From Diadema antillarum (Eukaryota), in the NCBI RefSeq assembly GCF_040938485.1, contig NW_027272280.1, forward strand, positions 248,001-312,000: a stretch of DNA of 64,000 nucleotides, read 5' to 3'. The notes below the pieces were generated by a model, which had not been told where the DNA came from, searched no databases, and saw only the letters and a program-made list of their open reading frames with translations. A program made the translations under genes and the position numbers. Shown in pieces: positions 1 through 59,529 of this stretch; position 1 is the stretch's first letter, and each line of letters opens with the position of its first letter.

Positions 1-254
1 TGCAATCGCGAATGAGGAACTTATCTTGCATTAAAAACTAAAATATCCAAAGGGATATCGCTACTGTATATACTTTTTTTTTTCATTTTCCTTTTTTGAA
101 ATTACATGATAATTCTATATGCCTCTGTTTATGTATGCGTCATAAATTTACGTTATATCAATGAAATCAATTCATGATCAATTCTGTCATCCGAAGATGT
201 GTGGGCAAACGGGTATCATAGCTCAATATACCTCAATGAATATAAAGATAAAGG

Positions 255-256
<2 letters not shown>

Positions 257-306
<50 letters not shown>
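257..306. repeat. (TA)n microsatellite
   Basis: Uninterrupted TA run of about 25 units. Confidence 0.95.
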
Positions 307-309
<3 letters not shown>

Positions 310-1775
310 AATCATCATCATCATCACCATCTATGTGTGTGCATAAATGATATATTATACGTGTGTGTGTGCGTGATTGTTTTAGTTTTTGTACAAATGT
401 TCTTTTTGTACTTTTCACCTAAGTAAAAATCCAGTGAATGAACGTAATTTCTGAAATTATCTTGTGTGTTTTCTTAACCGTTATACTGTCAATACCAATC
501 GAAGACTATACCGGTCTTCACAGCTAGAAAATGTTAAATGCTTTTCGGCAGTGGTCCTGAGAAGTTTTAGTTTAACATGTAAATTCGTTTCATATCAGTT
601 TTCTCTATATGTTAGCTGCCGAATGCTTCCTTTATCTGGTTTGGTTTGTCTCAAAGATACATGAGAAAGTAAATTGATCTGTTCACAAGAAAAAAAATAT
701 ATATTACGCATAGTTGATATCAAATGACACAAACTGACAGAAACAGATGGCACGAAAGGACATCAATGACACCATACAAGATTTTCAGCAGTGGTTTTTT
801 TCTTCACGAATACACCGACAGAGATTGTATAAAAGTATATAGGCTGCTCTCACTGAAACCATTCATTTTGATAAAGATCTCACCGAATAACTACGTAGAT
901 ATATAGCGACGCGTAACGGCAAACATATACTGCAATGTTGTCATCCATATTTTGTCTGTAGCTTCCCTCCTCATTCTGACAAAGGTAGGTTACTGGTATG
1001 TTTACGGCCCTAAATTGCCCCGGCTCAGCAAAATTATGATAGAATTGGGCTATTATCGAGATATCAGCGTTGAAGCCCTAAAGTGTATTTACTCACGCCT
1101 CTCAAAGTCCCAGTCACCTTTTCCGTCCCTTATTTTCCCCTAAGTCGTCAGTTTATGGTCCGAAACACGCACCAACATCTAGTGACAATTTCCGACCCAA
1201 ACTTGATGACGCTATATTATGCTCAAGTGTACCGCATTTATAGGTGCAATGACAGAGAGGATGAAAGCACAATCAAAACTAATGTAGGCTTATATATACA
1301 GTTATTGTGAGAACATTTTGCAAAAGTGCACCTGCATCAAAGAAATTGTATTATGGTACAATGTCATGTGTGTTTCTCACATTGACCTCAATGCACGTAA
1401 GCAATGTACATTGTATATAGACGTATAATTTGCTGCCGAGTATATATCAACCCTTTCCATGCCAATGAGTCATGCACGCGTTTCACACACAAACTTGTGG
1501 ACAGGAAATAAGCATGCAGAGGGTTAAATGGAGAGGACACGCGCCTTCATCACAATTTGCTGGGTTATTGATTCAAGGACATCAGCGTGCAGTAGGGGCC
1601 CTACCTATTATACTCATTGATGTTGCAGCCTATATGAGGCATTAATGTAATAATACTTACATACGCGGGTATGTGCAGATATTGTATTACCATATATGTT
1701 ATACTTTTTTGATGAATTGATAATTTGATACTAACATTCCGTTATCTTTATTTCAGCGATATGAGATTGCAGATC

Positions 1776-1927
1776 GGGGCCTCGTTTCATAAAACTTGTT
1801 TTCAATAACAAGTTACGATAGCCTTTAGTATAAGCTACTGAAATCTTTGCATCTGATTGGCTGAGAGCAAATTTGTCAAAGAAATGTGGCAGTTGTTACT
1901 GATAACAAGTTTAATGAAACGGGACCC
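1776..1927. mobile_element. Short MITE with GGG..CCC termini (PIF/Harbinger-like)
   Basis: Imperfect TIRs gggcctcgtttcataaaacttgtt / aacaagtttaatgaaacgggaccc. Similarly organised elements at 14194-14312 and 51235-51419. Confidence 0.55.
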
Positions 1928-1944
1928 AGAGCACACTTTATTAA

Positions 1945-2500
1945 AGGTAGGGGATACCTTTTACAGACCTCCCAAAATGCAGCAAAACATTGAATATGAA
2001 CCTCAGGGGACTTGTTTAGGCCACTGCTGAGAAATTTGGAAGTCAACAGTTATCTACAATTTGAATAATGCACAAAACTCAACTACTCAGTAGTTCTGTG
2101 GATGTGTCAGCCACACTTAAGCCTCTGTGTTGCAGTCTTCTGTATTTTTTATCTATAAACACAAATCTAAAAGTATAAGAGCTGATGTAATAACATATAG
2201 AGTGTGTGGCAAGAATGTATATAGAAATGTTTGTAAGTTTTGATGAACTTTCTTCACAAAATACACATGATGGACACACATGCAGTGCATGGGTCTGCAA
2301 AGGTAGCCTAGTAATGTACTGGAATTTACGGTGAGCCCCGAAAAAAATTCAATTCCAAATCTAACGGTCAATAAAAATGTACTAAATGTTACCTTCCACT
2401 TTCAATACTTTATGGGAGTTTCTAAAATGATACTCTCTTCAACATACCACTGTATTTATACAACTCTTCATTTGAGGCATGCAAATGGGATTCCCTACCT
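1945..2500. mobile_element. Non-autonomous DNA transposon with TTAA TSD (Kolobok-like)
   Basis: TTAA|aggtaggg ... ccctacct|TTAA: short TIR, AGG..CCT termini, TTAA on both sides. Confidence 0.65.
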
Positions 2501-3170
2501 TTAAGTTTGATACTCCGATAGACTAATTAGCAAACAATTGAACCTCTGTTTCTAACATTAGTGAAACGCTTTCATGCTGAAGCGATATCAGAATGAATCC
2601 AAGAAAACACAATCATGAAACGATTCACCTGACTTCTAATTTATATATAACACCAGATGTCTATCTATCTCTTTTTCTCTCGCATTATAAATACACACAC
2701 ATACTTAACCATTAATATCTATACATGTATAATAAGTCAAACACGAATTGAAGAACAAAATAAAACGCGATATACAACCGAAAAGGAGCAGTGCGCCTGT
2801 GACTGCACGTATAGGAAGAGTCCTTGAATCGAAATTCCAAGAGAATATTACGAACTAAAGCACGAATTTAAATAGTGAAATAGAAACTTACACACAACAA
2901 AAGAAATGCGCAAGATGTTTCTCTATACAATGTACATTTTATAGTTGCGCCTTCTTTATAGGTTTAACTGCTTTCCGGGTAACTAATGGATTCTAAATTA
3001 TACAAACAACAACTCAAAGCCAAACATGAACTGAAGGCGTATGTTGGGAGCATATGCTGCCTAATGATGAACCGCAAGCCCATATACAAGTCTAGATTGA
3101 TGTTAATCAGAAGGAATTATGAAACCAAGTCCTCTATTCCCCTTTAATGCGCAATGACTGATCTGCTCAG

Positions 3171-6100
3171 GTTGTCTTCGAACTGGTGAGTGATGTCGAC
3201 GGTAATTACTATGGGGAGTTCAGCTCGGTCGACGACGGCATCAATCGAATCTGGCTGCGCCTCGTCGCCGAGGCCGACGAGCGTGTCTACGGCGGTGGCG
3301 AACAGTTCTCATACTTCAACATGCGCGGGAGGACATTCCCAATATGGATCCAAGAACAGGTAACCGGAACCAGTCCTTTTCTCTCTTTGTTTGTCTATTA
3401 TTTTCTTCATTTATTTATGTTTATTCATTAATTCAGTCATTTATGCATTTATTTACTCATTAATTTGATTTTAGTCATTTACTTATTTATCTGTACCTAT
3501 TTATTCATTATTTATACATTCATTTATTTCTTACTATTCAATAATTATCTACTTTACTCGTCATTATCATGACTCCAATCAGACGCTGTTCTCGACAGGA
3601 ACACAAACTGAAATTGAAACAGCGAAAGAAGGAATTCAACTGATAATATGAATTTTGCTAGGTTTGCCTACACCTACACCGTTTCGTTCGTACCCCTCAG
3701 TAACAGCTTCCTGAAGTGTGATTGATAACAGAACAACAAGCAATCATCAAAATCAATTATTTACATTTTTTTAAGAATCAATGTATATTGACATTATTTC
3801 TACATGACGTTGGTATGCATGTCAATCTGTCAAGTGACTAAGACTAAGAATCTGCAAGTTTTCGTTTCTGCAAAGTAATTACAATATCAAGTTATATGTT
3901 GAAGCTGTACTTAAACATGCGCTTAGATAAGTTCGCGGAAGGGGAATGCTTTCTTATTTAGAGAATGTGATGTGTTTTTGAACTGTAGGGTGTCGGCCGC
4001 GACAAAAACTACGAGATCACCTTCCTAGCCGACCAGCGCGACGGGGGAGGAGGCGACTATTACACCACCTACTGGGCGCAGCCCACTTTCCTCTCCAGTC
4101 GCAAGTACTACGCGCACTTCACGACGAACGCGTACTCCGAGTTTGACTTCCGATCTAGCGCGTACCACGAGATTCAACTGTGGGGGGATTCCCCTGGTCG
4201 AGTCTACTTTTTCACGGGGGCGACCTATGTGGAACTGGTGGAGCAGATGACGGCTTACCTGGGCAGACAGCCGATGCCGCCGGAGTGGGTGTACAACGGG
4301 ACCATCATCGGGGTGCAAGGGGGCACAGACTTGATGCTGGAATATCTGGCCCTTGCAGAGGTGAGGTATATTTTTGTTTGGCGGTAAACTATGGAACATT
4401 TGATTATCACGTAATACACCGGGTTGCCCTATTGATCTGCTGACGTAATTTCCGCATCTGCAAGCAATATTTCGGTTACGTATATTGTAATGGTGTGATG
4501 ATCGGGCAAATTTGTAATAGAAACAAAGTGAAGGGGTAGACAATGGCTCCTGTTTGCTTTTTCCCTATTATGATGCTTCTTAGTATCCTACGAAAGGAAT
4601 CACTCCAACATTTTTTTTTCGTTCTCTTAATAGTTCGACTTCTACAATATTCAGTAACAGTATAGAAAGATAACTCGCTAGATTTAATGTCTTCGATAAT
4701 TTGGTGATCTGTTTTTAGACGCAGTTGCTACACAATGCATCAACCTGACATGGATAATATATACATAAGCCTCGTGTTATATCCAATGCTAGTTAGTTGA
4801 TGCATCTTTTTAGGTTATCAGGTCCTAAACCTTGAGGAGTGCTGCCTATAGCATTTTCGAAAGGTGACGAGATGATTAGCATACACCGAGCGTAACTTAT
4901 GAATTATTCATCTTACTTTGTTCGACTTTTCGTCATCTCATACAGGCTCATGGGATAAGAGTGAGTGGCATTTGGATTCAAGACTGGGCGGGGCGCATCA
5001 CAACATCCTTTGGTAGACGCCTCTTCTGGAACTGGGAGTGGGATCCTGAACAGTACCCTAATCTGGATCAGGTCATTGTCGATCTGAAGAAGCGCGGTAT
5101 TCGGATTCTCGTCTACGCCAACCCCAATCTCAACAGGGAAGGGAGCCTGTATCAAGAAGCGGCGAGGGAGGATTATCTAATCAAAAACACGAGTGGAGAC
5201 CCTTACATTGTCGATTATGGAGAGTTCTTTTGCGGGATAGTGGATTTCACCAACCCTGATGCCGCGCAGTGGTACAAGGACAGGATAATCAAGCAGAACA
5301 TGTTGGATCTGGGGATAGGGGGTTGGATGGCAGACTTCGGGGAGTATCTCCCCATCGACGCGGTGTTCCACAGCGGAGCGGAAGGGACAGACATCCACAA
5401 CAAGTGGCCGGCGATTTGGGCTCAGGTGAACCGGGAAGGGGTGGAGGAGGCGGGCCAGCTGGGAGAGATCCTGTTCTGGATGCGTGCTGGTTACACCGGA
5501 TCGCAGGAGTTCAGCGTCATGACCTGGGCTGGTGACCAGTTTGTGGATTACGGTCTAGCTGACGGCATCGCTTCCGTCATCCCGGGCGCCCTTTCGCTGG
5601 GCATATCCGGCTACGGGATGAACCACTTCGACATCGGCGGCTACACATCGCTCTTCGACGTCACCAGGACGGAGGAGCTCTTCCTCCGCTACGCCGAGAT
5701 GGCCGCCTTCACCACCATGATGCGGACCCACGAGGGCAACCGGCCTGACGAAAACTGGCAGTTCTATTCCAGCTCGCACACGATGTACGAGTTCGCGCGA
5801 CACACTGAAATCTACGTCGCCCTCAACGACTACGTGAACGCCACGATTTGGGAGAACCACGAGCGCGGCATACCCGTCCAGAGACCGCTCTTCCTGCACT
5901 TCGAGAAGGACGAGACATCCTACGATATCCAGTATCAGTACATGTTCGGTAACGATCTGCTGGTTGCGCCTGTCTACGAGCAGGGCATAGAAAGCTGGGA
6001 AGTGTATCTTCCGCCGGAAAACTGGGTGTTCCTCTGGGATGAAACCATCACGTCAGTAGGAGGGGAGACCGTGACGGTTCCTGCCCCGATGGGTAACATC

Positions 6101-7326
6101 CCGGTCTTCTTCCGCAGCGCGTCCCCCTGGGCGGATACTTTCAGGAGCTTGAGGCAAATCTCGGCAGGTGAGTCAGAGTCATCAGTCTTTTAATCAGTGC
6201 TCTATCACAGCACTGTGTGTTTACATTGCGACCCATTTATAATTCGACGCATGCAAACTCCATGTTGTGATCATCGTTATTATCTTCTATCTTTTTTAAC
6301 GCGCTCGCGTTCCTTGGCGGCGATTGCGGAATCCACTCTGCGCCAAAAATGTGTGATGAGACGGTTAATAATCTTGCATCCTCCATCCCCGCCGACTTTA
6401 AAAAGATTATAATTTTCTTTATGGTGGACGCCAAAGACGCGTTGTACGACAGGTGGTAAACCAGTTACACTACTAGTATAATTATGCTATGTATAATAAT
6501 AAAAAAAAATGATTAAATGTTATAGTGTCGACTCGGCAGATTAGGCGTGTGCAAAAATTATTGCGTATAGATAGACTGTCTTGACCGCAGAATAGCAAGG
6601 CCAGATACATCTGGCTCATAAATATTATGAGACCGAGATTTTTGATCATTCAGTCCCCCAAATCCGAGATAGTTGTTCTATAGACACCCTTTATCTTCTT
6701 GAGGTGATCGACGGCTAATTTTGTTCGTTTATGCGAAATATGAAAATCCCAATACTGTAGTCCCCTGGGACTGCCCATAGTTCATAATCCATCGCCCAAT
6801 CATAAAATTTGGTATCAACCTTTGTTCAAGGGGTGTAAAATAATTTCGTTCGTTATAACGTCATCTCATCTGCTAAACGATGCCTAGCAGCCGCGAGTTA
6901 AATTGCGGTGTTCAATTTTGTTATGATTGTATAGCTCCATGATCGAACAAGGAGGTAAGAACTTCTAGGCAAGCTCGCCTAGTACCTATACGTGGTCGTA
7001 CTTATATAGCTGACTGAACTGGATAATGAAATAACTACGATCTCATATCCATCTGCTTCACAATTTACAATCTTTACAGTACGTTTTGAGATCGTGGCAA
7101 AATTACATAAAACGACCGTTTAGTGGTGACGGATTACAAGTATGCTAGAAGTATAATGACGTCACACTGTAATGTGTTCATAATCTCGAATGCAGTGACG
7201 GTCCCCCCGCCGACAGCCACAAGTGCGCCGTTTACTACCGACAGCGTGGGTATGACGACGCCATCCATGTTCTTCACGGTGTGTGCGATACTCGCGGGTT
7301 TCGTTGTGCGCCGTTCCCAGAAGTAG
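3171..7326 (+). CDS. yihQ: GH31 sulfoquinovosidase (YihQ)-like alpha-glycosidase, spliced; 5' exons not found in the window
   Basis: Exons 3171-3359, 3989-4360, 4946-6167 and 7196-7326 have AG/GT borders in matching phase (reading through the 6168 donor stops at 6193). The spliced protein contains YGGGEQFSY, EQGVGRDK, GGDYYTTYWAQPTFLSS, LGRQP, GVQGG, WIQDW, FGRRLFWNW, WMADFGEYLP (nucleophile Asp), WAGDQ (acid/base Asp), DIGGYT, RTHEGNRP and DLLVAPV, colinear with E. coli YihQ as recalled. Confidence 0.9.
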
Positions 7327-8571
7327 ACATGCAACCAACGAGATGATAACAATTATACACAAAGAGGATGTCGCCATCGAAATGTAATCAATATTTGGTA
7401 AGGTGCTTTCACGAGGCTAAAAATTTTATACTTCGGGTTTGACAATCCAGTTGATAGCCTGACTTTACGTAGTGGAAAATCCGTCTACATTAATGTTTAT
7501 GTCGCTTACACGCGTTCACTCAATATAATGCTGGATTCGCAGTTTGTAGAATTAATCAGGCTGTTAATTGTTTTTCTTTTCTGATTTTTTCTCCGCCTTT
7601 GATGGGACATTTTCCTGTGGCAACAAAAATATAACGTCGAAGATAATCATATTTGAATATGTAAAGAGCTTAATTCTTTTATATGTGTTACAGTACTTTG
7701 TGTTACTATAATTATTTTCTGTAGATAGTCTGTCTTTATCATTTATTCCCTTGTTTATGGTATGAAGAAGCCGTTTTGGATTTAGGCAGGAACCCCCCCC
7801 CCCCCCAATATAAGAAAAATAATAAATAGAAAAACAAGAAGCAAAACAACTCACTGTAAGACATAATATCAGCATTTTCAAAAGATTCTAAACGTGGAAA
7901 TGTTTAAATGGAAATCAGTTGATGGTGTATCTGCGATGGCACTGAACAAAACATGGATTTTCACCACAGATAATCCCCCTTCTCCAAACTCTGCCTGTTT
8001 TATACTTTTTTTCATGTTTGCTTTTGTTTCTCTCCACTATATCAGTCAATTCAATCCCTCCTGCATTTTGCCCTTGCAGTTTTAGTCTACGTATTGTACC
8101 TCAATATTTTGTACAATTAATATGTATGATATTCACTGACTCTGTCAATTATGTGAATTTAACCACCTTGTATTATTTCGAACTACTTTTCCCGCACTTA
8201 TTTGATGTGTTGATGTGGGTAATATGACAAATAATACAAGTGCTACATTAATTACCAAATTATCTGTCTCGCTATCTTGTTACTCTGGCATATCTTTGAT
8301 GTGTTTCAAACTTTCACATATACTGGAGTGTCTATGCCCCGTATGAAGCTCACGAGTCTGCTTCGACAATGCAGAGAGAAAGAAGTGACAAAGTCTTCAA
8401 GCTATGCCCTAAAAACTTACTAGAATTCAGATTTAAAAAATAGCAAAATGTGTTTCAGGTGGTTGAATATGTAAATTATAATCCATTCTAGATGACTGTG
8501 GATTAGTAAAAAAACCTCTGCAAATCGACACAAAATGTTCACACTTGATCTTTTTACATTCCCTCTATGTT

Positions 8572-8780
8572 CTGTAAAAGTGGATATTTTCGTGCGAGTA
8601 ATTTTTCGCGCTAGGCTGGGTGAGAAGAGTTTCGCGTGTTTTTAAATCCGTGGAATCAAGACATCACACACAGGACTATATGGCAAGCAAAAATATTCGC
8701 GTGCTTTTATTTTCGCGCTAGTTTCTGGTTGCGCGAAATGCGCGAAAATTTCAACACCGCGAAAATTTCCACTTTTACAG
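8572..8780. mobile_element. MITE, CTGTAAAAGTGGA TIR family (copy 1)
   Basis: TIR ctgtaaaagtgga / tccacttttacag; near-identical copy at 51807-52005. Confidence 0.8.
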
Positions 8781-9109
8781 AGTATATGCTACCAACACAG
8801 TGCATCAATGATGCATCTTTATTTGCAACATATACATAAATAGCACCAAGAATGTATAAACATATAAACAAGAAAAAAAAAAACACCCCAAAACCTCAAA
8901 CAAGATCTCAGTATTGGTGACAGATCCCATGAAGAGAGGGCTAACCTCTGGCTTCAATGTTTCTGATCATATTGTTTTAGTGTTTGATCTTTTCTGTTTA
9001 GATGTGTTCATTAAAGAAAAAATCCCCTCTCTGCTACAAGTGTATTTGTGTCATAAAAGGAATTATAGACTTTGTATATTCAGTTTAAATAATGTATAAT
9101 TATTATATA

Positions 9110-9384
9110 CACCCAACCAAAAAAGTTGTATTTTTGGATATATCTCAAAAAGTATTTCACCGATTTTCATAATTCAAATGGGATTGGATAAGTAATTTTA
9201 TTACTCATAACATGAATGGCGTATCATTGCCACCAGATATCCCTATTGGTGTGAAAAAAAAAATGCATTTTATGTCAAAATGCATGGAAAAAAAAAGTTA
9301 TTAAAAAAAATTATGAAAATCGGTAAAATACTTTTTGAGATATATCCAAAAATGCTAGGGGGAACTTACTTTTTTGGTTGAGTG
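9110..9384. mobile_element. Tc1/mariner-like MITE with long TIRs and TA TSD
   Basis: TA|cacccaaccaaaaaagt ... acttttttggttgagtg|TA, plus a subterminal inverted block (ggatatatctcaaaaagtatttcaccgattttcataatt). Confidence 0.75.
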
Positions 9385-10228
9385 TATACTTCTAGACACA
9401 CTGTACATTGAAGCAAACTGTGGACTCTATGAAGCCCATTATGCATGCCACAGCTAAGTTAACATGCACATTACTCTTCTCACAAATAGATATTCACAAC
9501 TAAGAGAAGACATAGAGTAATGATACTAAATGACAATGCCACGGTTCTGTATATTTGTTGCATTTTATTTACAAAGGCATTCATTTAAACATCTTCAATC
9601 AACATGACCATCCAATCACTGTATAGAAAATATATGATTTCTTGTTTTTGTTTGTTTCTTTGCTTCTTTAAATCTAGACATATGTATGTGATCAACATCA
9701 CCTTGCTCCGCAACAGTAGTGATAATTGAACACTGTGTCTGACACAAATGTCCTCAGGAACATGTACAGTCTTCAGTTGCATATCCTCCCTGAATTAGCA
9801 AAACTGTCTGCATCGTTACAGAGAAGAATAAAGTGACATTTGAATATGTAAAACATCACATTACAGCCATGAATAATGAAGCTATTGTGATGAACTCTGT
9901 AGGCATTATCATAGGTTGTATTCATGTTGCACTAACATTAGAATAACAGCTCAAAATGATGTTGAGAATGATAGAAGGTTGATAATAACAGTGACAACAA
10001 TGATAGCAACCATAATTATGATAACTGAACCTCATCTGTATATATATGAAACTCAGTTAACTGCCTCACAGGATGAGGGCATTGCTATACCAAGTACTGG
10101 TCTACAATCACCTGCAGAAGACTTTGAGTTCAGAAAATTAAAAAAAAAATATGTGAAATCAACACACAGTAAAATTTTGAGTGAAATGGATAATTCTGGG
10201 AAACTTTAGAAAAGTTTGAACATCAATA

Positions 10229-10581
10229 CAGTGGACTCCCGTTATGACAAAGTCCTGGGGACCAGCAGTTTTCTTTCGTTATATCGAAAGTCATTATAAC
10301 CGAACAAATAAACAATAAAAATAAATAGAACCGATAATATTGCAGACTGACTTTTTATTTTCATTGCAACTGATTGACAAATTGCCTTACTTCGACGTAA
10401 ATAAGCACTGAATTGATCAGTGTTTTGGTAGTAAACACTGATCAATTCAGTGCTTATTTACGTCGATGTAGGGCAATTTGTCAATCAGTTGCAATGAAAA
10501 CACCTCGACGGAAGAATTCCATGAATTTACTTTTTACATGTATTTTGTTATAATCATGTTTGTTATAATGGGAGTGCACTG
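10229..10581. mobile_element. Tc1/pogo-like MITE (TA|cagtg TIR) containing an internal hairpin
   Basis: TA|cagtggactcccgttat ... ataatgggagtgcactg|TA. Confidence 0.7.
10358..10500. repeat. 143-bp near-perfect palindrome
   Basis: Arms of about 68 bp with 2 mismatches around a tggtagt loop. Confidence 0.9.
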
Positions 10582-10582
10582 T

Positions 10583-10849
10583 ATTAAAAATCATGATACT
10601 TTGTGGTTGTTTGTTTACCCACTAGTTTGTATCCACGCAAGTAGCATGAAGTTCAAAAGACCAAGATTATTTGGATGCCATAAAACATGAACTAGTACGA
10701 TCAAGATTAATTGGATGCCATGAAACATGAACTCATAAAGTTCATGTTTCATGGCATCCAATTAATCTTGGTCTTTTGACCTTCATGCTGCTTGAATCGA
10801 TAGAAACTGGTGGGCAAACAAACAACCACAAAGTATAATGATTTTTAAT
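10583..10849. repeat. Foldback (imperfect inverted repeat) element
   Basis: attaaaaatcatgatactttgtggttgtttg... is mirrored at 10849; internal duplication of about 37 bp (caagattaattggatgccatgaaacatgaact). Confidence 0.8.
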
Positions 10850-11038
10850 TGAAGCAGTGGTGAACAGTTGATTTCTACCAATTTGCAGGTATTCTACTAG
10901 CATACCATCCTTTATATAGCTTGAAGCTCTAAAGAGGATCACCTTTTCAGGGAAAAAAAAACATCTAGGAAATATACATTACTAATTCCAGAAAAAAAAA
11001 AAACCTTTCTGCTTGCATATCATTATTTTTTCATAATA

Positions 11039-11570
11039 CAGTGCACTCCCATTACAACGAACACGGTTATAACGAAATTTCGTTATAACGAAGTAAAACT
11101 TCAGGTCCCGAAATTATCGCCATTAAAGTCTATGGTACAAAATTCGCTTATAACGAACACGGTTATAGCAAAATTTTCGTTATAACAAAGTATTTTTCGA
11201 GCACCACTGGAAAAGAAAAACAAAAGAAATAAGCTCGGTTATAACGAACTGAGGATCGCTTTCGAAAATACGCAGCGGAACAAGCATTCATAGCGTCTCT
11301 GCATGGGCGAACGCGTCACATTACTGTGTGTTCGCTTGGTGTGTCACGCACAGTTTCCGAGTTGAACTTGCATTATTGTAATACTATAATCTCAAATTGA
11401 ATAACTATTTGTTTTATTGTTCACATAGCTTTCCAGTGTATGACGAGTATTCATCAAACAGAATATCATATATGCGCGGCTTCCTTGTTTTCGTTATATA
11501 TTGTATTTGTTCGGTTATAACGAAAGAAAACTGCCAGTCCCAAGCATTTCGTTATAGCGGGAGTGCACTG
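11039..11570. mobile_element. Tc1/pogo-like MITE, same family as 10229-10581, opposite orientation
   Basis: TA|cagtgcactcc ... gggagtgcactg|TA with repeated gttataacga motifs. Confidence 0.75.
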
Positions 11571-11865
11571 TACTTGCTCAATACATGTATACTCAAAAGT
11601 TTCACTGATCTGCTAATTCTCTTTCAAAATTTTCTTCTAGAAGAAAATTTATTCTACAGATGTAATCCTCCTGGATCAATTGTATTATGTCAATTGCATT
11701 TGCTCTTAAAATAAACATAACATGCTCACTATCTTCACTCTCCGGAAATGTTTTACTTTTAAGATCTCATGCGAAATTGCACCATAATTGGGATGCATTT
11801 TGTTGTTTTTGTTTTTCTAGATAAGATAAAATATATGTTTCAGTAGAAAAAAAAGGCAGAAAGAA

Positions 11866-56193: not shown

Positions 56194-58278
56194 TTAGTTG
56201 TACATCTCATATGTGTATTGCTCTGTGTGGGTCGCATCAAAGGACACCGATATGGAGTCAATCTCCAGCGCAAACTCCCCGTCAACAGCGTCAGCCATTG
56301 TCAGGCCGACGGCAGTGACCGACTCAAGGTCAGGAGGAGTCTGCTTGTCCTGCACACGGCCTTTACTGGACATGAAGAACTTGGTGAAGGGTATCTGAGG
56401 CAGAAAGAAGGGGAACAGGTTGCATACAAATACTCTATGAGACTCTAATACACAAATACATTTATATTTGTACAGTGGACTAGCTACAATGAAGAAAACT
56501 GATATTAAAACAAACTTCTTCAAACCATCTTCTCTTGCCCCCATAATATTCTAAAGTTTCTTTGCATTCTATTGTTTAGCAAACCAAGACATAACAAAAT
56601 ATGGAGTTATCAAAATAATTTCACTAATTGATCCAAACGAGTTTGTTTTCACAAGACTCCACTGCACATTAAATGAATCTAGGGTTATATACCTCATAGT
56701 TGACACTTAATTATCATTAAGGAGAAGGCTAAAAAAGAAAGAGGAATTATGTAATAAATAAAATACAATGCAGAAGGTGCAACCTTTCTCCAAGGGCTCT
56801 GCAGAACATGGACAAATGCCAAGACTGAATATGTGAATGACACAATGGCATCTAAAGTGATCTCTCGGAAATTGTTGTCTCAGGTGAGATGACTGAAATT
56901 ATTTGCATACTGCTCATGAATTTGTTCTATGATGGATGACTTCCCCTTGTCCCATTTTGCTCAAATCTGCACATCCTTATCTCTGCAATGCCACTGAAAT
57001 CATTAAAAAGTTTTCTGACCGAGGGAATTTCTCCTAACGGCAGAAGCAAAGGAGTGAATGGAACCTTCTTATGTGGCACAAACTTTGAAATTTTAGCTAA
57101 AGCCCGATGTCTTTCCAATGAGACGGGATGAGTAATTTCTCTTACCGAAACATCCTGCCAGTACGGGCCGCCCCTTGTGAACATGAAGTAGCTCCAAACG
57201 TCATCATGCGTGTCCGTGAAATAACCCTTGATTATAAGATTCACCATATACGCCCGACCATCGCCCCTGACCCTCATCCGCAACACGTTGAATGGAGACA
57301 GATCAAACGAAAGCTTTCTGTTGAAGGACCCCTGAAGCAGACCAAAAAAAAAAATTGATATTTCCAGCAAAGGGCAAACTGAAAGGGAATACAATAATTC
57401 CCTCAGCAGACTGCAAAGTATAACAGCAATTTGTGAAATCCACAACATCTACTTACAAGTTCATCTTCCTTGGAAGATTAGGGGGAGGGGGGAGCTGATA
57501 TCACCTGTTAATGTCACTTGCCATCATAATCAAATCCTGTAGCTAATCTCCATCGTCTTCTGCAAATAGATATTTACTGAATTACACATTAACTGTACTT
57601 TGTATACATGTGTACTGTATGACAATCATGTTGTATTCTGACAGGAATATAACTGTACGAACAGAAAATAAACATTTATGAGATAAGAGAAAGAAACGAA
57701 AATTTGGGGAATGAATGACATATAGAGGTTTTACACTACATACCTATCAAATTATCACTGTACATCAAATGATATAGAGAGAATGACTCTGACGGGCAGA
57801 ATCTACTCACATAGACCTGCTTTGATCGAATAGCGCAGTAACCACTTCTCGCAGTTTCTCCGTCACGGGGTACCTCGGTACACAGGTTACCATGGAAGAG
57901 CAGTTTGTTGTTCCGGCTGACAGACAGGGCTGCCGTGCTCCTGCCTCCAATATCCTTGTCCGTTTGCACTGAGAAATCGTCCACGCTCTCCGGGCCGCGA
58001 AAGTGCCACAGCACTCGATTCTGGTCGAACATGGTATCAAGGTTTGGGCTGCGTAGCTTCGTCATCATCTCCTCCCCCCACATCTTCACATTCCGATTGA
58101 AGTACTTGAGTAAACTCTCCCTACGCCGTGTACTTTGGCCATCTCTGCCATCCGAACCTGTGCTGCTCAACCTGCAACACCCAGCACAGACGGGAGGGGT
58201 TCTTTCCCAAAGTTCTAGTGTTCTTCTCCCGAATAAGTGTCTGACAAGGGCAGGGCACTTTCGTTGTAGTAGAGCCAT
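56194..58278 (-). CDS. NDUFAF1: Complex I intermediate-associated protein 30 (CIA30)
   Basis: Exons 58278-57811, 57331-57146 and 56394-56194, all phase 0. Motifs: TDKDIGGRS, FHGNLCTEVPRDGETARSGY, LRMRVRGDGRAYMVN, YFMFTRGGPYWQ, IPFTKFF, DGEFALEIDSI. Confidence 0.94.
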
Positions 58279-59529
58279 GGTGCACAGTTCTAGGTAGATC
58301 TCCACATAAATCCTATATCAACAATACCGTGTGCTTGATTAAACTCCTCTGCTCTGGATGATTACAGTGCAGTCATTTGTACATTCAGATTCTATGACAA
58401 CGTCATGCACTGCTCACCAATGCACTTTGACTTTTGTATGCATTCTTCTTCCTGCTGCATTGTGAGCATTTCTTAAACCTGCAAATAAGAAAATGAAAAA
58501 GGAGTAAGGAAAAAAAAAAAGATGAAGCTTGGCCCTGGAGGGGGAAGAACTAAAAGGGTATAGATTTAAAACTTAATACAAAACATTCACTCATTAATTT
58601 TAACCAGTAACTTTATATTAAACATACGTTTGCCCAACCAGACGCCGTGCGCCAGCACCGACACTTGTGTACAGCGATGCTAGGGCTGTGTATAGTTAAA
58701 TATACAATGTACATATATTGTTCAGACAGAAAATTTGTCTGTCCTCTGCTTAAAAAAATAACTTTTTGACTTTATGGCCCTCCTTTGATAGGAAAGAGGG
58801 GATCCTGTGAAAGCCAGATATAGTCTCTGTGGAGCACATCCTTGACTTCAACAAGATAAAGACCCGATCTTTCTGTCAGGGTATTGTACCGGTATATGAA
58901 AAATTCACTCTGTATCATACAATCACACAAATTAAACTAGTAGTAGTAATATGTTGTAATAGATTGTACAAAATGTATTCTTTAGACTTTATACCTCTTT
59001 TTAATTTCATCTTATTTAACCTGCAACAACATACATGTAGGGTCATGTTACATTTTTATTTTCACCATATGTTCAGACATGCATTATTTGCATACTAGAT
59101 CTAATTGTTAAACACTGTTGCAAACTTGTTTATGTTACTAAATGTTATTTGTTAGACTTGTTTAATCCAACTACCACGGGTACCATGTAAATTAATGATG
59201 TAATTTACGTTTGTAATGTGTAAAACCATGAGAGTATCCTGAAAGACAACCCCGAGCAAACCAAACTATAATCACATAGCCCATTACTAACGTTGGTGTC
59301 AAGCTGGAGGAGAAAGAGGAAATCCAAATAAATTTTGATACAGTAATGTCAGTAAGATAGGACCCTAGACACCGCACCTGTCCCTGGTAGTAACGTTTAG
59401 TAAACAAACAACGTTTAGAACTTAGATAGAAGAGGAATCTTCATCCAGAAAGGTTTTTGAGGAAGAATTTTCATCATTGCTCCCCCTCTGTTAAATTGTA
59501 CTGTACTGAAATCTCTGGAAATACTTACC

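What the first reader, a model, noticed from the sequence alone, without database searches (positions are those of the whole stretch)
3171..6193. Intron-containing animal sulfoquinovosidase with an intact QQRWY sulfonate-recognition motif
Seen: the spliced protein is colinear with bacterial YihQ and keeps GVQGG (Q), WIQDW (Q), GRRLFWNW (R, W), DIGGYT (Y), both catalytic Asp residues (WMADFGEY, WAGDQ) and RTHEG. Spliceosomal introns in AT-rich DNA argue against bacterial contamination. Known: R301/W304/Y508 plus the Q/Q (or K/E) pair define SQases that release sulfoquinovose from the plant and algal sulfolipid SQDG; characterised enzymes are bacterial, and eukaryotic homologues are mostly predicted. 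Inference: a marine grazer may encode its own enzyme for algal sulfolipid digestion, possibly from an ancient horizontal transfer, giving animals a direct role in the sulfur cycle.
Basis: partly seen in the sequence, partly recalled or inferred. Interest (0 to 1): 0.8.

Follow-up and report, generated by a model that had tools for sequence, protein, structure and literature searches.

The report
Sea urchin sulfoquinovosidase gene, already known
The window holds exons 2-5 of a real, spliced sea-urchin (Diadema) gene for a membrane-anchored enzyme that very probably cuts the sulfur sugar off algal sulfolipids. RefSeq already names this gene "sulfoquinovosidase-like", and a 2026 preprint already describes the animal family.

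Summary
Three GT-AG, frame-preserving exons (3171-3359, 3989-4360, 4946-6167) plus a fourth (7196-7326) encode a protein colinear with bacterial YihQ. All eight residues that define sulfoquinovosidases are present. Exon 4 alone scores 625 bits against NCBIfam's YihQ equivalog (cut-off 553).

The region is 99.2% identical in protein to RefSeq "sulfoquinovosidase-like [Diadema antillarum]". Exon 1, which carries the signal peptide, lies about 0.3 kb left of the window. The stop at 6193 is an intron read-through. A spliced contig from a public run joins 6167 to 7196, which adds a Pro/Thr stalk and a hydrophobic anchor.

The gene is under purifying selection (pN/pS 0.11). It is not contamination. 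In a maximum-likelihood tree, bacteria and animals split at 100/100 support, and the echinoderm part follows the species tree. Two intron positions are shared with hemichordates and amphioxus.

The horizontal-transfer idea is neither shown nor excluded; any transfer would predate the deuterostome ancestor.

Uchida et al. (bioRxiv, February 2026) already report animal SQases in 65 species, echinoderms included. Novelty is therefore low. Small additions here are an intron map and a tandem echinoid paralogue ending in KDEL.

The parts
1..3170 (+). 3' part of intron 1. Exon 1 (start codon, signal peptide, first 102 codons) lies left of the window.
   Evidence: No match to residues 1-102 of the D. 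antillarum protein or to HMM positions 1-87 anywhere in the window. Window 26-1942 aligns to L006 10622-12430, and exon 1 in L006 is 10001-10306.
3171..3359 (+). Exon 2 (63 codons, phase 0 at both ends). End of the N-terminal beta-sandwich domain, with the GGGEQF motif.
   Evidence: Splice sites. PF13802 hit. NF007746 model positions 101-154. Same exon in the RefSeq model of D. antillarum.
3989..4360 (+). Exon 3 (124 codons). Start of the TIM barrel, and holds the Q262 equivalent (4316-4318).
   Evidence: NF007746 model positions 155-273. PDB 5aed residues 154-268, and K245 of 5ohs aligns with this Q. Run X4's spliced contig covers 4003-4360.
4946..6167 (+). Exon 4 (407 codons plus 1 base). 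Catalytic barrel and C-terminal beta-sandwich. Holds Q288, R301, W304, D405 (nucleophile), D472 (acid/base), Y508 and H537.
   Evidence: PF01055 and PF21365. NF007746 at 625 bits against a cut-off of 553. PDB 8r56 and 5aed at E 1e-153 and 1e-149. Codons checked. The X4 contig joins 4360 to 4946/4947.
6168..7195 (+). Intron 4 (phase 1, GT..AG).
   Evidence: X4 joint 6163->7192, 'GT..AG (cut +4)'. RefSeq model junction.
7196..7326 (+). Exon 5 coding part (stop at 7324-7326). Encodes a Pro/Thr/Ser-rich stalk, a 15-residue hydrophobic segment and the basic tail RRSQK, giving a C-terminal membrane anchor (transmembrane or GPI signal). The 3' UTR runs on to about 7800.
   Evidence: Translation. Kyte-Doolittle maximum 2.36. 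97.7% identical to residues 696-739 of the D. antillarum protein. The X4 contig covers 7192-7393 and extends about 400 nt beyond the laid stretch.

Best explanation
This is exons 2-5 of the five-exon Diadema gene that RefSeq names 'sulfoquinovosidase-like'. It is a vertically inherited animal member of the YihQ subfamily of glycoside hydrolase family 31.

Shown here:
- The gene is intact, spliced and under purifying selection.
- It keeps every residue known to define bacterial sulfoquinovosidases.

Inferred:
- The protein enters the secretory pathway through the signal peptide of exon 1.
- The C-terminal anchor encoded by exon 5 holds it on the outer or luminal face of a membrane, most likely in digestive epithelium. 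Vertebrate GH31 brush-border glycosidases are tethered in a comparable way.
- There it hydrolyses the alpha-glycosidic bond of dietary sulfoquinovosyl diacylglycerol or sulfoquinovosyl glycerol by the retaining double-displacement mechanism. The D405 equivalent would act as nucleophile and the D472 equivalent as acid/base. The R301/W304/Y508 equivalents would bind the sulfonate, and the Q262/Q288 pair would shape the pocket.
- The products would be free sulfoquinovose plus glycerol or lipid.
- Because no animal sulfoglycolysis genes are known, the sulfoquinovose is probably passed on to gut bacteria.
For: - Gene model and splicing.
- Family assignment: exon 4 alone scores 625 bits and the full-length orthologue 897 bits against NF007746 (cut-off 553), covering model positions 9-681 of 683. 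Solved SQases are the best PDB matches by more than 100 orders of magnitude over other GH31 enzymes.
- All eight key residues are present. They are conserved in most animal and all sampled bacterial members.
- Identity: 99.2% identical to D. antillarum XP 'sulfoquinovosidase-like'.
- Selection: pN/pS 0.11, from 13 synonymous and 5 non-synonymous differences.
- Phylogeny: the echinoderm clade has 97/92 support and follows the species tree. The window gene is sister to the Diadema and Lytechinus orthologues at 100/100.
- Add-ons absent from bacteria: signal peptide in the orthologue's exon 1, anchor and three N-glycosylation sequons.
- Substrate: SQDG is detected in sea urchin lipidomes (PMC12248970).
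- Expression in relatives: digestive-organ expression of animal SQases in molluscs and amphioxus, and signal peptide or anchor predictions (Uchida et al. 2026).
Against: - No animal SQase has been assayed, so substrate specificity rests on residue conservation alone.
- The only expression evidence is one spliced contig from a coded run about 4% diverged from the window. It gives no tissue information.
- Whether the anchor is a transmembrane helix or a GPI signal is not decided.
- Exon 1 was not seen in this genome copy, only in the 97.5%-identical assembly.
Confidence: 0.78

Rival explanations
1. It is a GH31 enzyme of the YihQ lineage that has drifted in animals to another substrate, such as an ordinary alpha-glucoside, a 6-modified glucoside or an endogenous glycoconjugate. 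It would then not act on sulfolipid.
For: NCBIfam still labels the YihQ equivalog 'alpha-glucosidase'. Some animal paralogues have lost Y508, Q288 or R301, so the lineage can change specificity. A tandem echinoid paralogue ends in KDEL, which suggests a non-digestive role for at least that copy.
Against: This particular copy keeps all eight residues, including the sulfonate triad. In bacterial SQases that triad is what excludes glucosides, according to Speciale 2016 as summarised in Uchida et al..
Confidence: 0.15
2. It is bacterial contamination, or a recent lineage-specific horizontal transfer into the urchin genome.
For: The nearest non-animal relatives are all bacterial, at 53-58% identity. 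The exons are much more G+C-rich than their surroundings.
Against: - Three GT-AG introns in the window and a spliced contig.
- The same locus appears in an independent D. antillarum assembly, with animal neighbours.
- LINE-type reverse transcriptase and a CIA30 gene lie in the window.
- Bacteria and animals split at 100/100, and the echinoderm topology equals the species tree.
- Intron positions and phases are shared with Ptychodera and Branchiostoma.
Confidence: 0.01
3. It is a decaying or unexpressed gene copy.
For: Exon 1 is not in the window. No run on record as RNA holds the stretch.
Against: The frame is open over 637 codons. pN/pS is 0.11. A spliced contig exists. Exon 1 is intact in the near-identical assembly.
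Confidence: 0.04

Closest known systems
RefSeq 'sulfoquinovosidase-like [Diadema antillarum]' (P0136, 739 aa) and the 'animal SQase' family of Uchida et al. 2026 (bioRxiv 10.64898/2026.02.11.705467)
   Same: It is the same gene. Five amino-acid differences in 637 residues, identical exon lengths and junctions, the same anchor, and the same predicted role.
   Different: It comes from a different individual, haplotype or very close species. The DNA is 97.5% identical over 9.2 kb, and intron 1 differs by repeat content.
E. coli YihQ (PDB 5aed/5aeg/5oht) and related solved SQases (8r56, 6pnr)
   Same: Colinear over the whole catalytic core. Identity is about 52-58% in exon 4. All of Q262, Q288, R301, W304, D405, D472, Y508 and H537 are kept.
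   Different: The animal protein adds a signal peptide, a Pro/Thr stalk and a hydrophobic C-terminal anchor, and its gene has introns. The bacterial proteins are cytoplasmic and end where exon 4 ends.
Agrobacterium SmoI/SQase (PDB 5ohs)
   Same: Same fold, same catalytic residues and same sulfonate triad. E 3e-127.
   Different: Agrobacterium uses the K245/E270 pair, whereas the urchin gene has the E. coli-type Q/Q pair.
Vertebrate brush-border GH31 enzymes (sucrase-isomaltase, maltase-glucoamylase) and MYORG
   Same: GH31 fold and membrane tethering of a luminal glycosidase. This is a working analogy only.
   Different: They are far more distant in sequence, at E 1e-10 to 1e-25 against 1e-149 for YihQ. 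They lack the sulfonate triad and are anchored at the N-terminus (the anchoring point is from general knowledge, not tested here).

Membership tests
Sulfoquinovosidase (YihQ/SmoI subfamily of GH31) | Scores above the curated cut-off of the YihQ equivalog model (NCBIfam NF007746) over its full length | tested here: met
   Exon 4 alone scores 625.4 bits against a cut-off of 553. Exons 2-4 cover model positions 101-680 colinearly. The 99%-identical full-length orthologue scores 897 bits over positions 9-681 of 683.
Sulfoquinovosidase (YihQ/SmoI subfamily of GH31) | Catalytic nucleophile and acid/base aspartates (E. coli D405, D472) and H537 | tested here: met
   GAC at 5333-5335, GAC at 5534-5536 and CAC at 5729-5731, placed by alignment to 5aed.
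Sulfoquinovosidase (YihQ/SmoI subfamily of GH31) | Sulfonate-binding triad R301/W304/Y508 | tested here: met
   CGC at 5018-5020, TGG at 5027-5029 and TAC at 5642-5644.
Sulfoquinovosidase (YihQ/SmoI subfamily of GH31) | Q262/Q288 pair (or the K/E pair) | tested here: met
   CAA at 4316-4318 and CAA at 4979-4981. The first aligns with K245 of Agrobacterium 5ohs.
Sulfoquinovosidase (YihQ/SmoI subfamily of GH31) | Groups with SQases, not with other GH31 clades | tested here: met
   The PDB ranking puts six SQase entries at E 1e-127 to 1e-153. YicI follows at 1e-42 and MYORG at 8e-21. The tree of SQase-family members places it in the echinoderm clade. No GH31 outgroup was included, so the root is untested.
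Sulfoquinovosidase (YihQ/SmoI subfamily of GH31) | Hydrolyses SQ glycosides (SQDG, SQGro, pNP-SQ) and not glucosides | not testable with these tools
   Needs an enzyme assay. No animal member has been assayed, according to Uchida et al..
Animal SQase (Uchida et al. 2026) | Single PF01055 domain, N-terminal signal peptide, and often a C-terminal GPI or transmembrane anchor downstream of the GH31 domains | tested here: met
   One PF01055 and one PF21365 domain. The anchor is encoded by exon 5. The signal peptide was seen only in the orthologue's exon 1, which lies outside the window. No SignalP, NetGPI or TMHMM run was possible.
Horizontally acquired bacterial gene in animals | Animal clade nested inside bacterial diversity in a rooted tree, and absent from other eukaryotes | tested here: inconclusive
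   In the unrooted tree the sampled bacteria and the animals are two sides of one 100/100 branch. No outgroup or K/E-type SQases were available. No non-animal eukaryote appeared among the best 120 hits of two searches, but the lists are truncated.

The most novel reading that the evidence does not exclude
All bilaterian SQases, this one included, descend from a single bacterium-to-animal transfer into the bilaterian stem. The gene was then domesticated by adding a signal peptide, introns and a separately encoded membrane-anchor exon, and was duplicated in echinoids into an anchored copy and a KDEL-terminated copy. That would make it one of the oldest functional bacterial gene acquisitions in animals, and it would give grazers a host-encoded entry point into the sulfoquinovose cycle.
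Probability: 0.35. Interest if true: 0.55.

Novelty: already known. Interest (0 to 1): 0.3.

Why it matters
[quoted passage not shown] A host-encoded, gut-exposed sulfoquinovosidase in a keystone reef grazer would mean the animal itself opens the sulfolipid and supplies sulfoquinovose to its microbiota.

That idea is already in print as a hypothesis, and the gene is already named in RefSeq. The value of this window is therefore confirmatory. It gives a clean, transcript-supported gene model in Diadema, evidence of purifying selection, and an intron map showing the gene was already an interrupted, anchor-bearing animal gene in the deuterostome ancestor.

Tried and rejected
- Exon 1 in window 1-3170: searched by tblastn with N-termini of seven homologues, by hmmsearch --max with a family HMM on all six frames, and with the D. 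antillarum N-terminus. Nothing was found. It lies left of the window.
- RNA runs: no listed holder is on record as RNA. One run (X4) nevertheless holds a spliced contig. X1-X3 behave as DNA, because their contigs run through introns.
- First greedy exon mapping: it failed for Apostichopus and was redone with longer seeds and an exact junction solver.
- First pN/pS count: it was wrong because exon 5 of L006 was offset by 3 nt. It was corrected.
- Initial impression that echinoderm and gastropod genes share no intron at all: softened after exact mapping. Patella has a phase-1 intron one nucleotide from the echinoderm phase-0 site at EQ|G, and a phase-0 intron two alignment columns from the deuterostome intron 1.
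- Rooted origin test: not done.
- Structure prediction: judged unnecessary at more than 50% identity to solved SQases.
- Earlier findings: the word search found nothing.
Full report
**1. What is in the sequence**

Joining 3171-3359, 3989-4360 and 4946-6167 on the + strand gives one open frame of 594 codons. Each exon is preceded by a pyrimidine-rich tract ending in AG and followed by GT. The first two introns are phase 0.

The exons are 57% G+C (GC3 74%), and the introns are 31-40%. The window overall is about 38% G+C and has no N runs.

**2. Family assignment**

- Pfam finds the GH31 N-terminal domain in exon 2 and the GH31 TIM barrel plus C-terminal domain in exon 4.
- NCBIfam's YihQ equivalog NF007746 matches the three exons colinearly at model positions 101-154, 155-273 and 279-680 of 683. 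Exon 4 alone scores 625 bits, above the whole-protein cut-off of 553.
- Against solved structures, the six best matches are sulfoquinovosidases or close kin (8r56, E. coli YihQ 5aed/5aee, 6pnr, Agrobacterium 5ohs/5ohy) at E 1e-127 to 1e-153. The next GH31 enzyme, YicI, is at 1e-42, and MYORG is at 8e-21.
- Counting along the printed alignments, and checking the codons by script, places Q262, Q288, R301, W304, D405, D472, Y508 and H537 at 4316, 4979, 5018, 5027, 5333, 5534, 5642 and 5729 respectively.
- The Q at the first position aligns with K245 of the Agrobacterium enzyme, so this gene has the E. coli-type Q/Q pair.

**3. Whose gene it is**

A first protein search found starfish, sea cucumber and gastropod proteins ahead of bacteria. 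A second search, with a gastropod query, listed RefSeq "sulfoquinovosidase-like" proteins from many aquatic invertebrates.

One of these, from Diadema antillarum (P0136, 739 aa), is 99.2% identical to the window's product. There are five differences in 637 residues.

The D. antillarum contig aligns to window 2733-11870 at 97.5% identity, and to window 26-1942 at 82%. The window is therefore another haplotype, another individual or a very close relative, not the same assembly.

The RefSeq model has five exons, and the last four have exactly the lengths and junctions found here. Exon 1 encodes 102 residues that begin with a typical signal peptide. It sits at L006 10001-10306, while window position 26 corresponds to L006 10622. 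Exon 1 is therefore roughly 0.3-0.6 kb left of the window. This agrees with my failure to find it inside the window.

**4. The true 3' end**

Public run X4 (coded organism A) holds a 2181-nt contig that covers 4003-4360, 4947-6163 and 7192-7393. It skips both intervening stretches. The second joint carries GT..AG ends and resolves to 6167|7196.

Exon 5 (7196-7326) adds 43 residues: a Pro/Thr/Ser-rich stalk, a 15-residue hydrophobic segment (Kyte-Doolittle mean 2.36) and a basic RRSQK end.

Runs X1-X3 carry contigs that run through introns, so they behave as DNA. The X4 contig differs from the window by about 4% in exon 4. It is evidence of splicing in a close relative or a divergent allele, not in this very individual.

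**5. Is it functional and native?**

- Between the window and the D. antillarum assembly there are 13 synonymous and 5 non-synonymous differences in 1914 coding bases, giving pN/pS 0.11.
- The window also carries LINE-type endonuclease and reverse-transcriptase ORFs and exons of a CIA30-domain gene.
- In the D. antillarum contig, the neighbours are a second GH31 gene upstream and a CDP-alcohol phosphatidyltransferase gene downstream.
- A careful maximum-likelihood tree was built from 56 rows under LG+C20+F+G4. Nine rows were left out as long-branched, fragmentary or unnamed, and they are listed.
- In that tree the 24 bacterial sequences separate from all animal sequences at 100/100 support.
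- Echinoderms are recovered at 97/92 with crinoid, asteroid, holothurian and echinoid order. Lophotrochozoans are recovered at 100/99.
- The window gene sits with D. antillarum and Lytechinus copy 1 at 100/100. A second echinoid copy (D. setosum, Lytechinus copy 2) is its sister, so the duplication predates the Diadema/Lytechinus split.

**6. Intron map (not in the literature I could read)**

I solved the junctions exactly for eight annotated genes.

- The phase-0 intron after Diadema residue 102 falls in the same alignment column and phase in Lytechinus, Ptychodera and Branchiostoma.
- The phase-1 intron just before the stalk/anchor exon is present in all six deuterostome genes, within three poorly aligned columns. 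It lies exactly where bacterial proteins end.
- The phase-0 introns at 165/166 and 289/290 are in all four echinoderm genes mapped (two sea urchins, a starfish and a sea cucumber; no crinoid was mapped) and in no other gene mapped.
- Gastropods have five or more other introns. One Patella intron is one nucleotide from the 165/166 site, and another is two alignment columns from the first deuterostome intron.
- The gene was therefore already interrupted and anchor-bearing in the deuterostome ancestor. A recent transfer is excluded.

**7. Mechanism**

By homology, this is a retaining alpha-glycosidase that works by double displacement. The D405 equivalent is the nucleophile and the D472 equivalent the acid/base. 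The sulfonate is held by the R/W/Y triad.

The eukaryote-specific ends point to a catalytic domain facing the lumen or the outside of a membrane. Those ends are a signal peptide, three N-X-S/T sequons, a stalk and an anchor.

Two further observations fit a digestive role:
- Sea urchin tissues contain SQDG (PMC12248970).
- In molluscs and amphioxus, animal SQases are expressed mainly in digestive organs (Uchida et al.).

These localisation and substrate steps are inferred, not shown.

**8. Prior knowledge**

Uchida et al. (bioRxiv 10.64898/2026.02.11.705467, February 2026) report the following:
- SQase homologues in 65 animal species across nine phyla, including Echinodermata.
- Conservation of the same seven residues.
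- Signal peptides, GPI or transmembrane anchors downstream of the GH31 domains, and digestive expression.
- A gene tree that broadly follows the species tree, except for rotifers.
- No downstream sulfoglycolysis genes in Tridacna.
- That Speciale et al. 2016 had already seen animal homologues.

The preprint's main text does not mention introns, exons, paralogues, tandem arrangement or KDEL, and it names no sea urchin.

**9. Verdict**

The enzyme-family assignment is as firm as sequence can make it.

The digestive and sulfur-cycle reading is reasonable but unproven and already published as a hypothesis. Ancient horizontal transfer remains open. The finding is a good annotation of a known gene, not a discovery.

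Noticed in passing
L006:1-1219 (D. antillarum contig, about 9 kb upstream of the orthologue; outside the window): A tandem GH31/SQase paralogue whose last exon ends in ...GKDEL, an ER-retrieval signal, with no anchor. The D. setosum protein P0148 ends the same way, and the crinoid Antedon protein ends in HEEL. Echinoids therefore carry one membrane-anchored and one probably ER-retained copy. The 2026 preprint does not mention this.
   Followed up: partly
Proteins P0122, P0123, P0124 (Nucella, Babylonia, Littorina); also P0143, P0139, P0177: A caenogastropod paralogue clade has replaced Q288, R301 and/or Y508. Several other animal copies have Y508F, including Lytechinus copy 2, Asterias and Orchesella. 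These copies may no longer recognise sulfonate.
   Followed up: no
window 1774-1930 and 1941-2504: Two MITE-like elements in intron 1, with 38-nt and 31-nt terminal inverted repeats. Contig depth across 1800-2600 is about 10,000-fold or more above the flanks in runs X1-X3, and several hundred-fold above the exon depth in X4. This stretch does not align with the D. antillarum assembly.
   Followed up: partly
window 33738-36732 (-) and 27519-28031 (+): ORFs of 675 aa and 314 aa with reverse transcriptase and AP-endonuclease domains, the pattern of a non-LTR retrotransposon, plus a separate RT fragment. An earlier scan note reads 27862-40124 as an LTR element. I did not resolve this.
   Followed up: no
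window 56927-58305 (-): Two ORFs matching consecutive halves of the CIA30 domain (complex I assembly factor), probably exons of an ordinary nuclear gene.
   Followed up: no
window 11860-13059, 28380-29500, 44442-45659: An element of about 1.2 kb is present three times in the window, at 85-89% identity to L006 25995-27189. One copy interrupts the colinear alignment with the D. antillarum contig.
   Followed up: no
L007 (Lytechinus pictus orthologue): The exon structure is the same, but intron 1 is about 30.7 kb and the last intron uses a GC donor.
   Followed up: no
window 6168-6193: Retaining intron 4 would end the protein after eight extra residues and give a soluble form. No contig supports this, and the only transcript-like contig is spliced.
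   Followed up: partly
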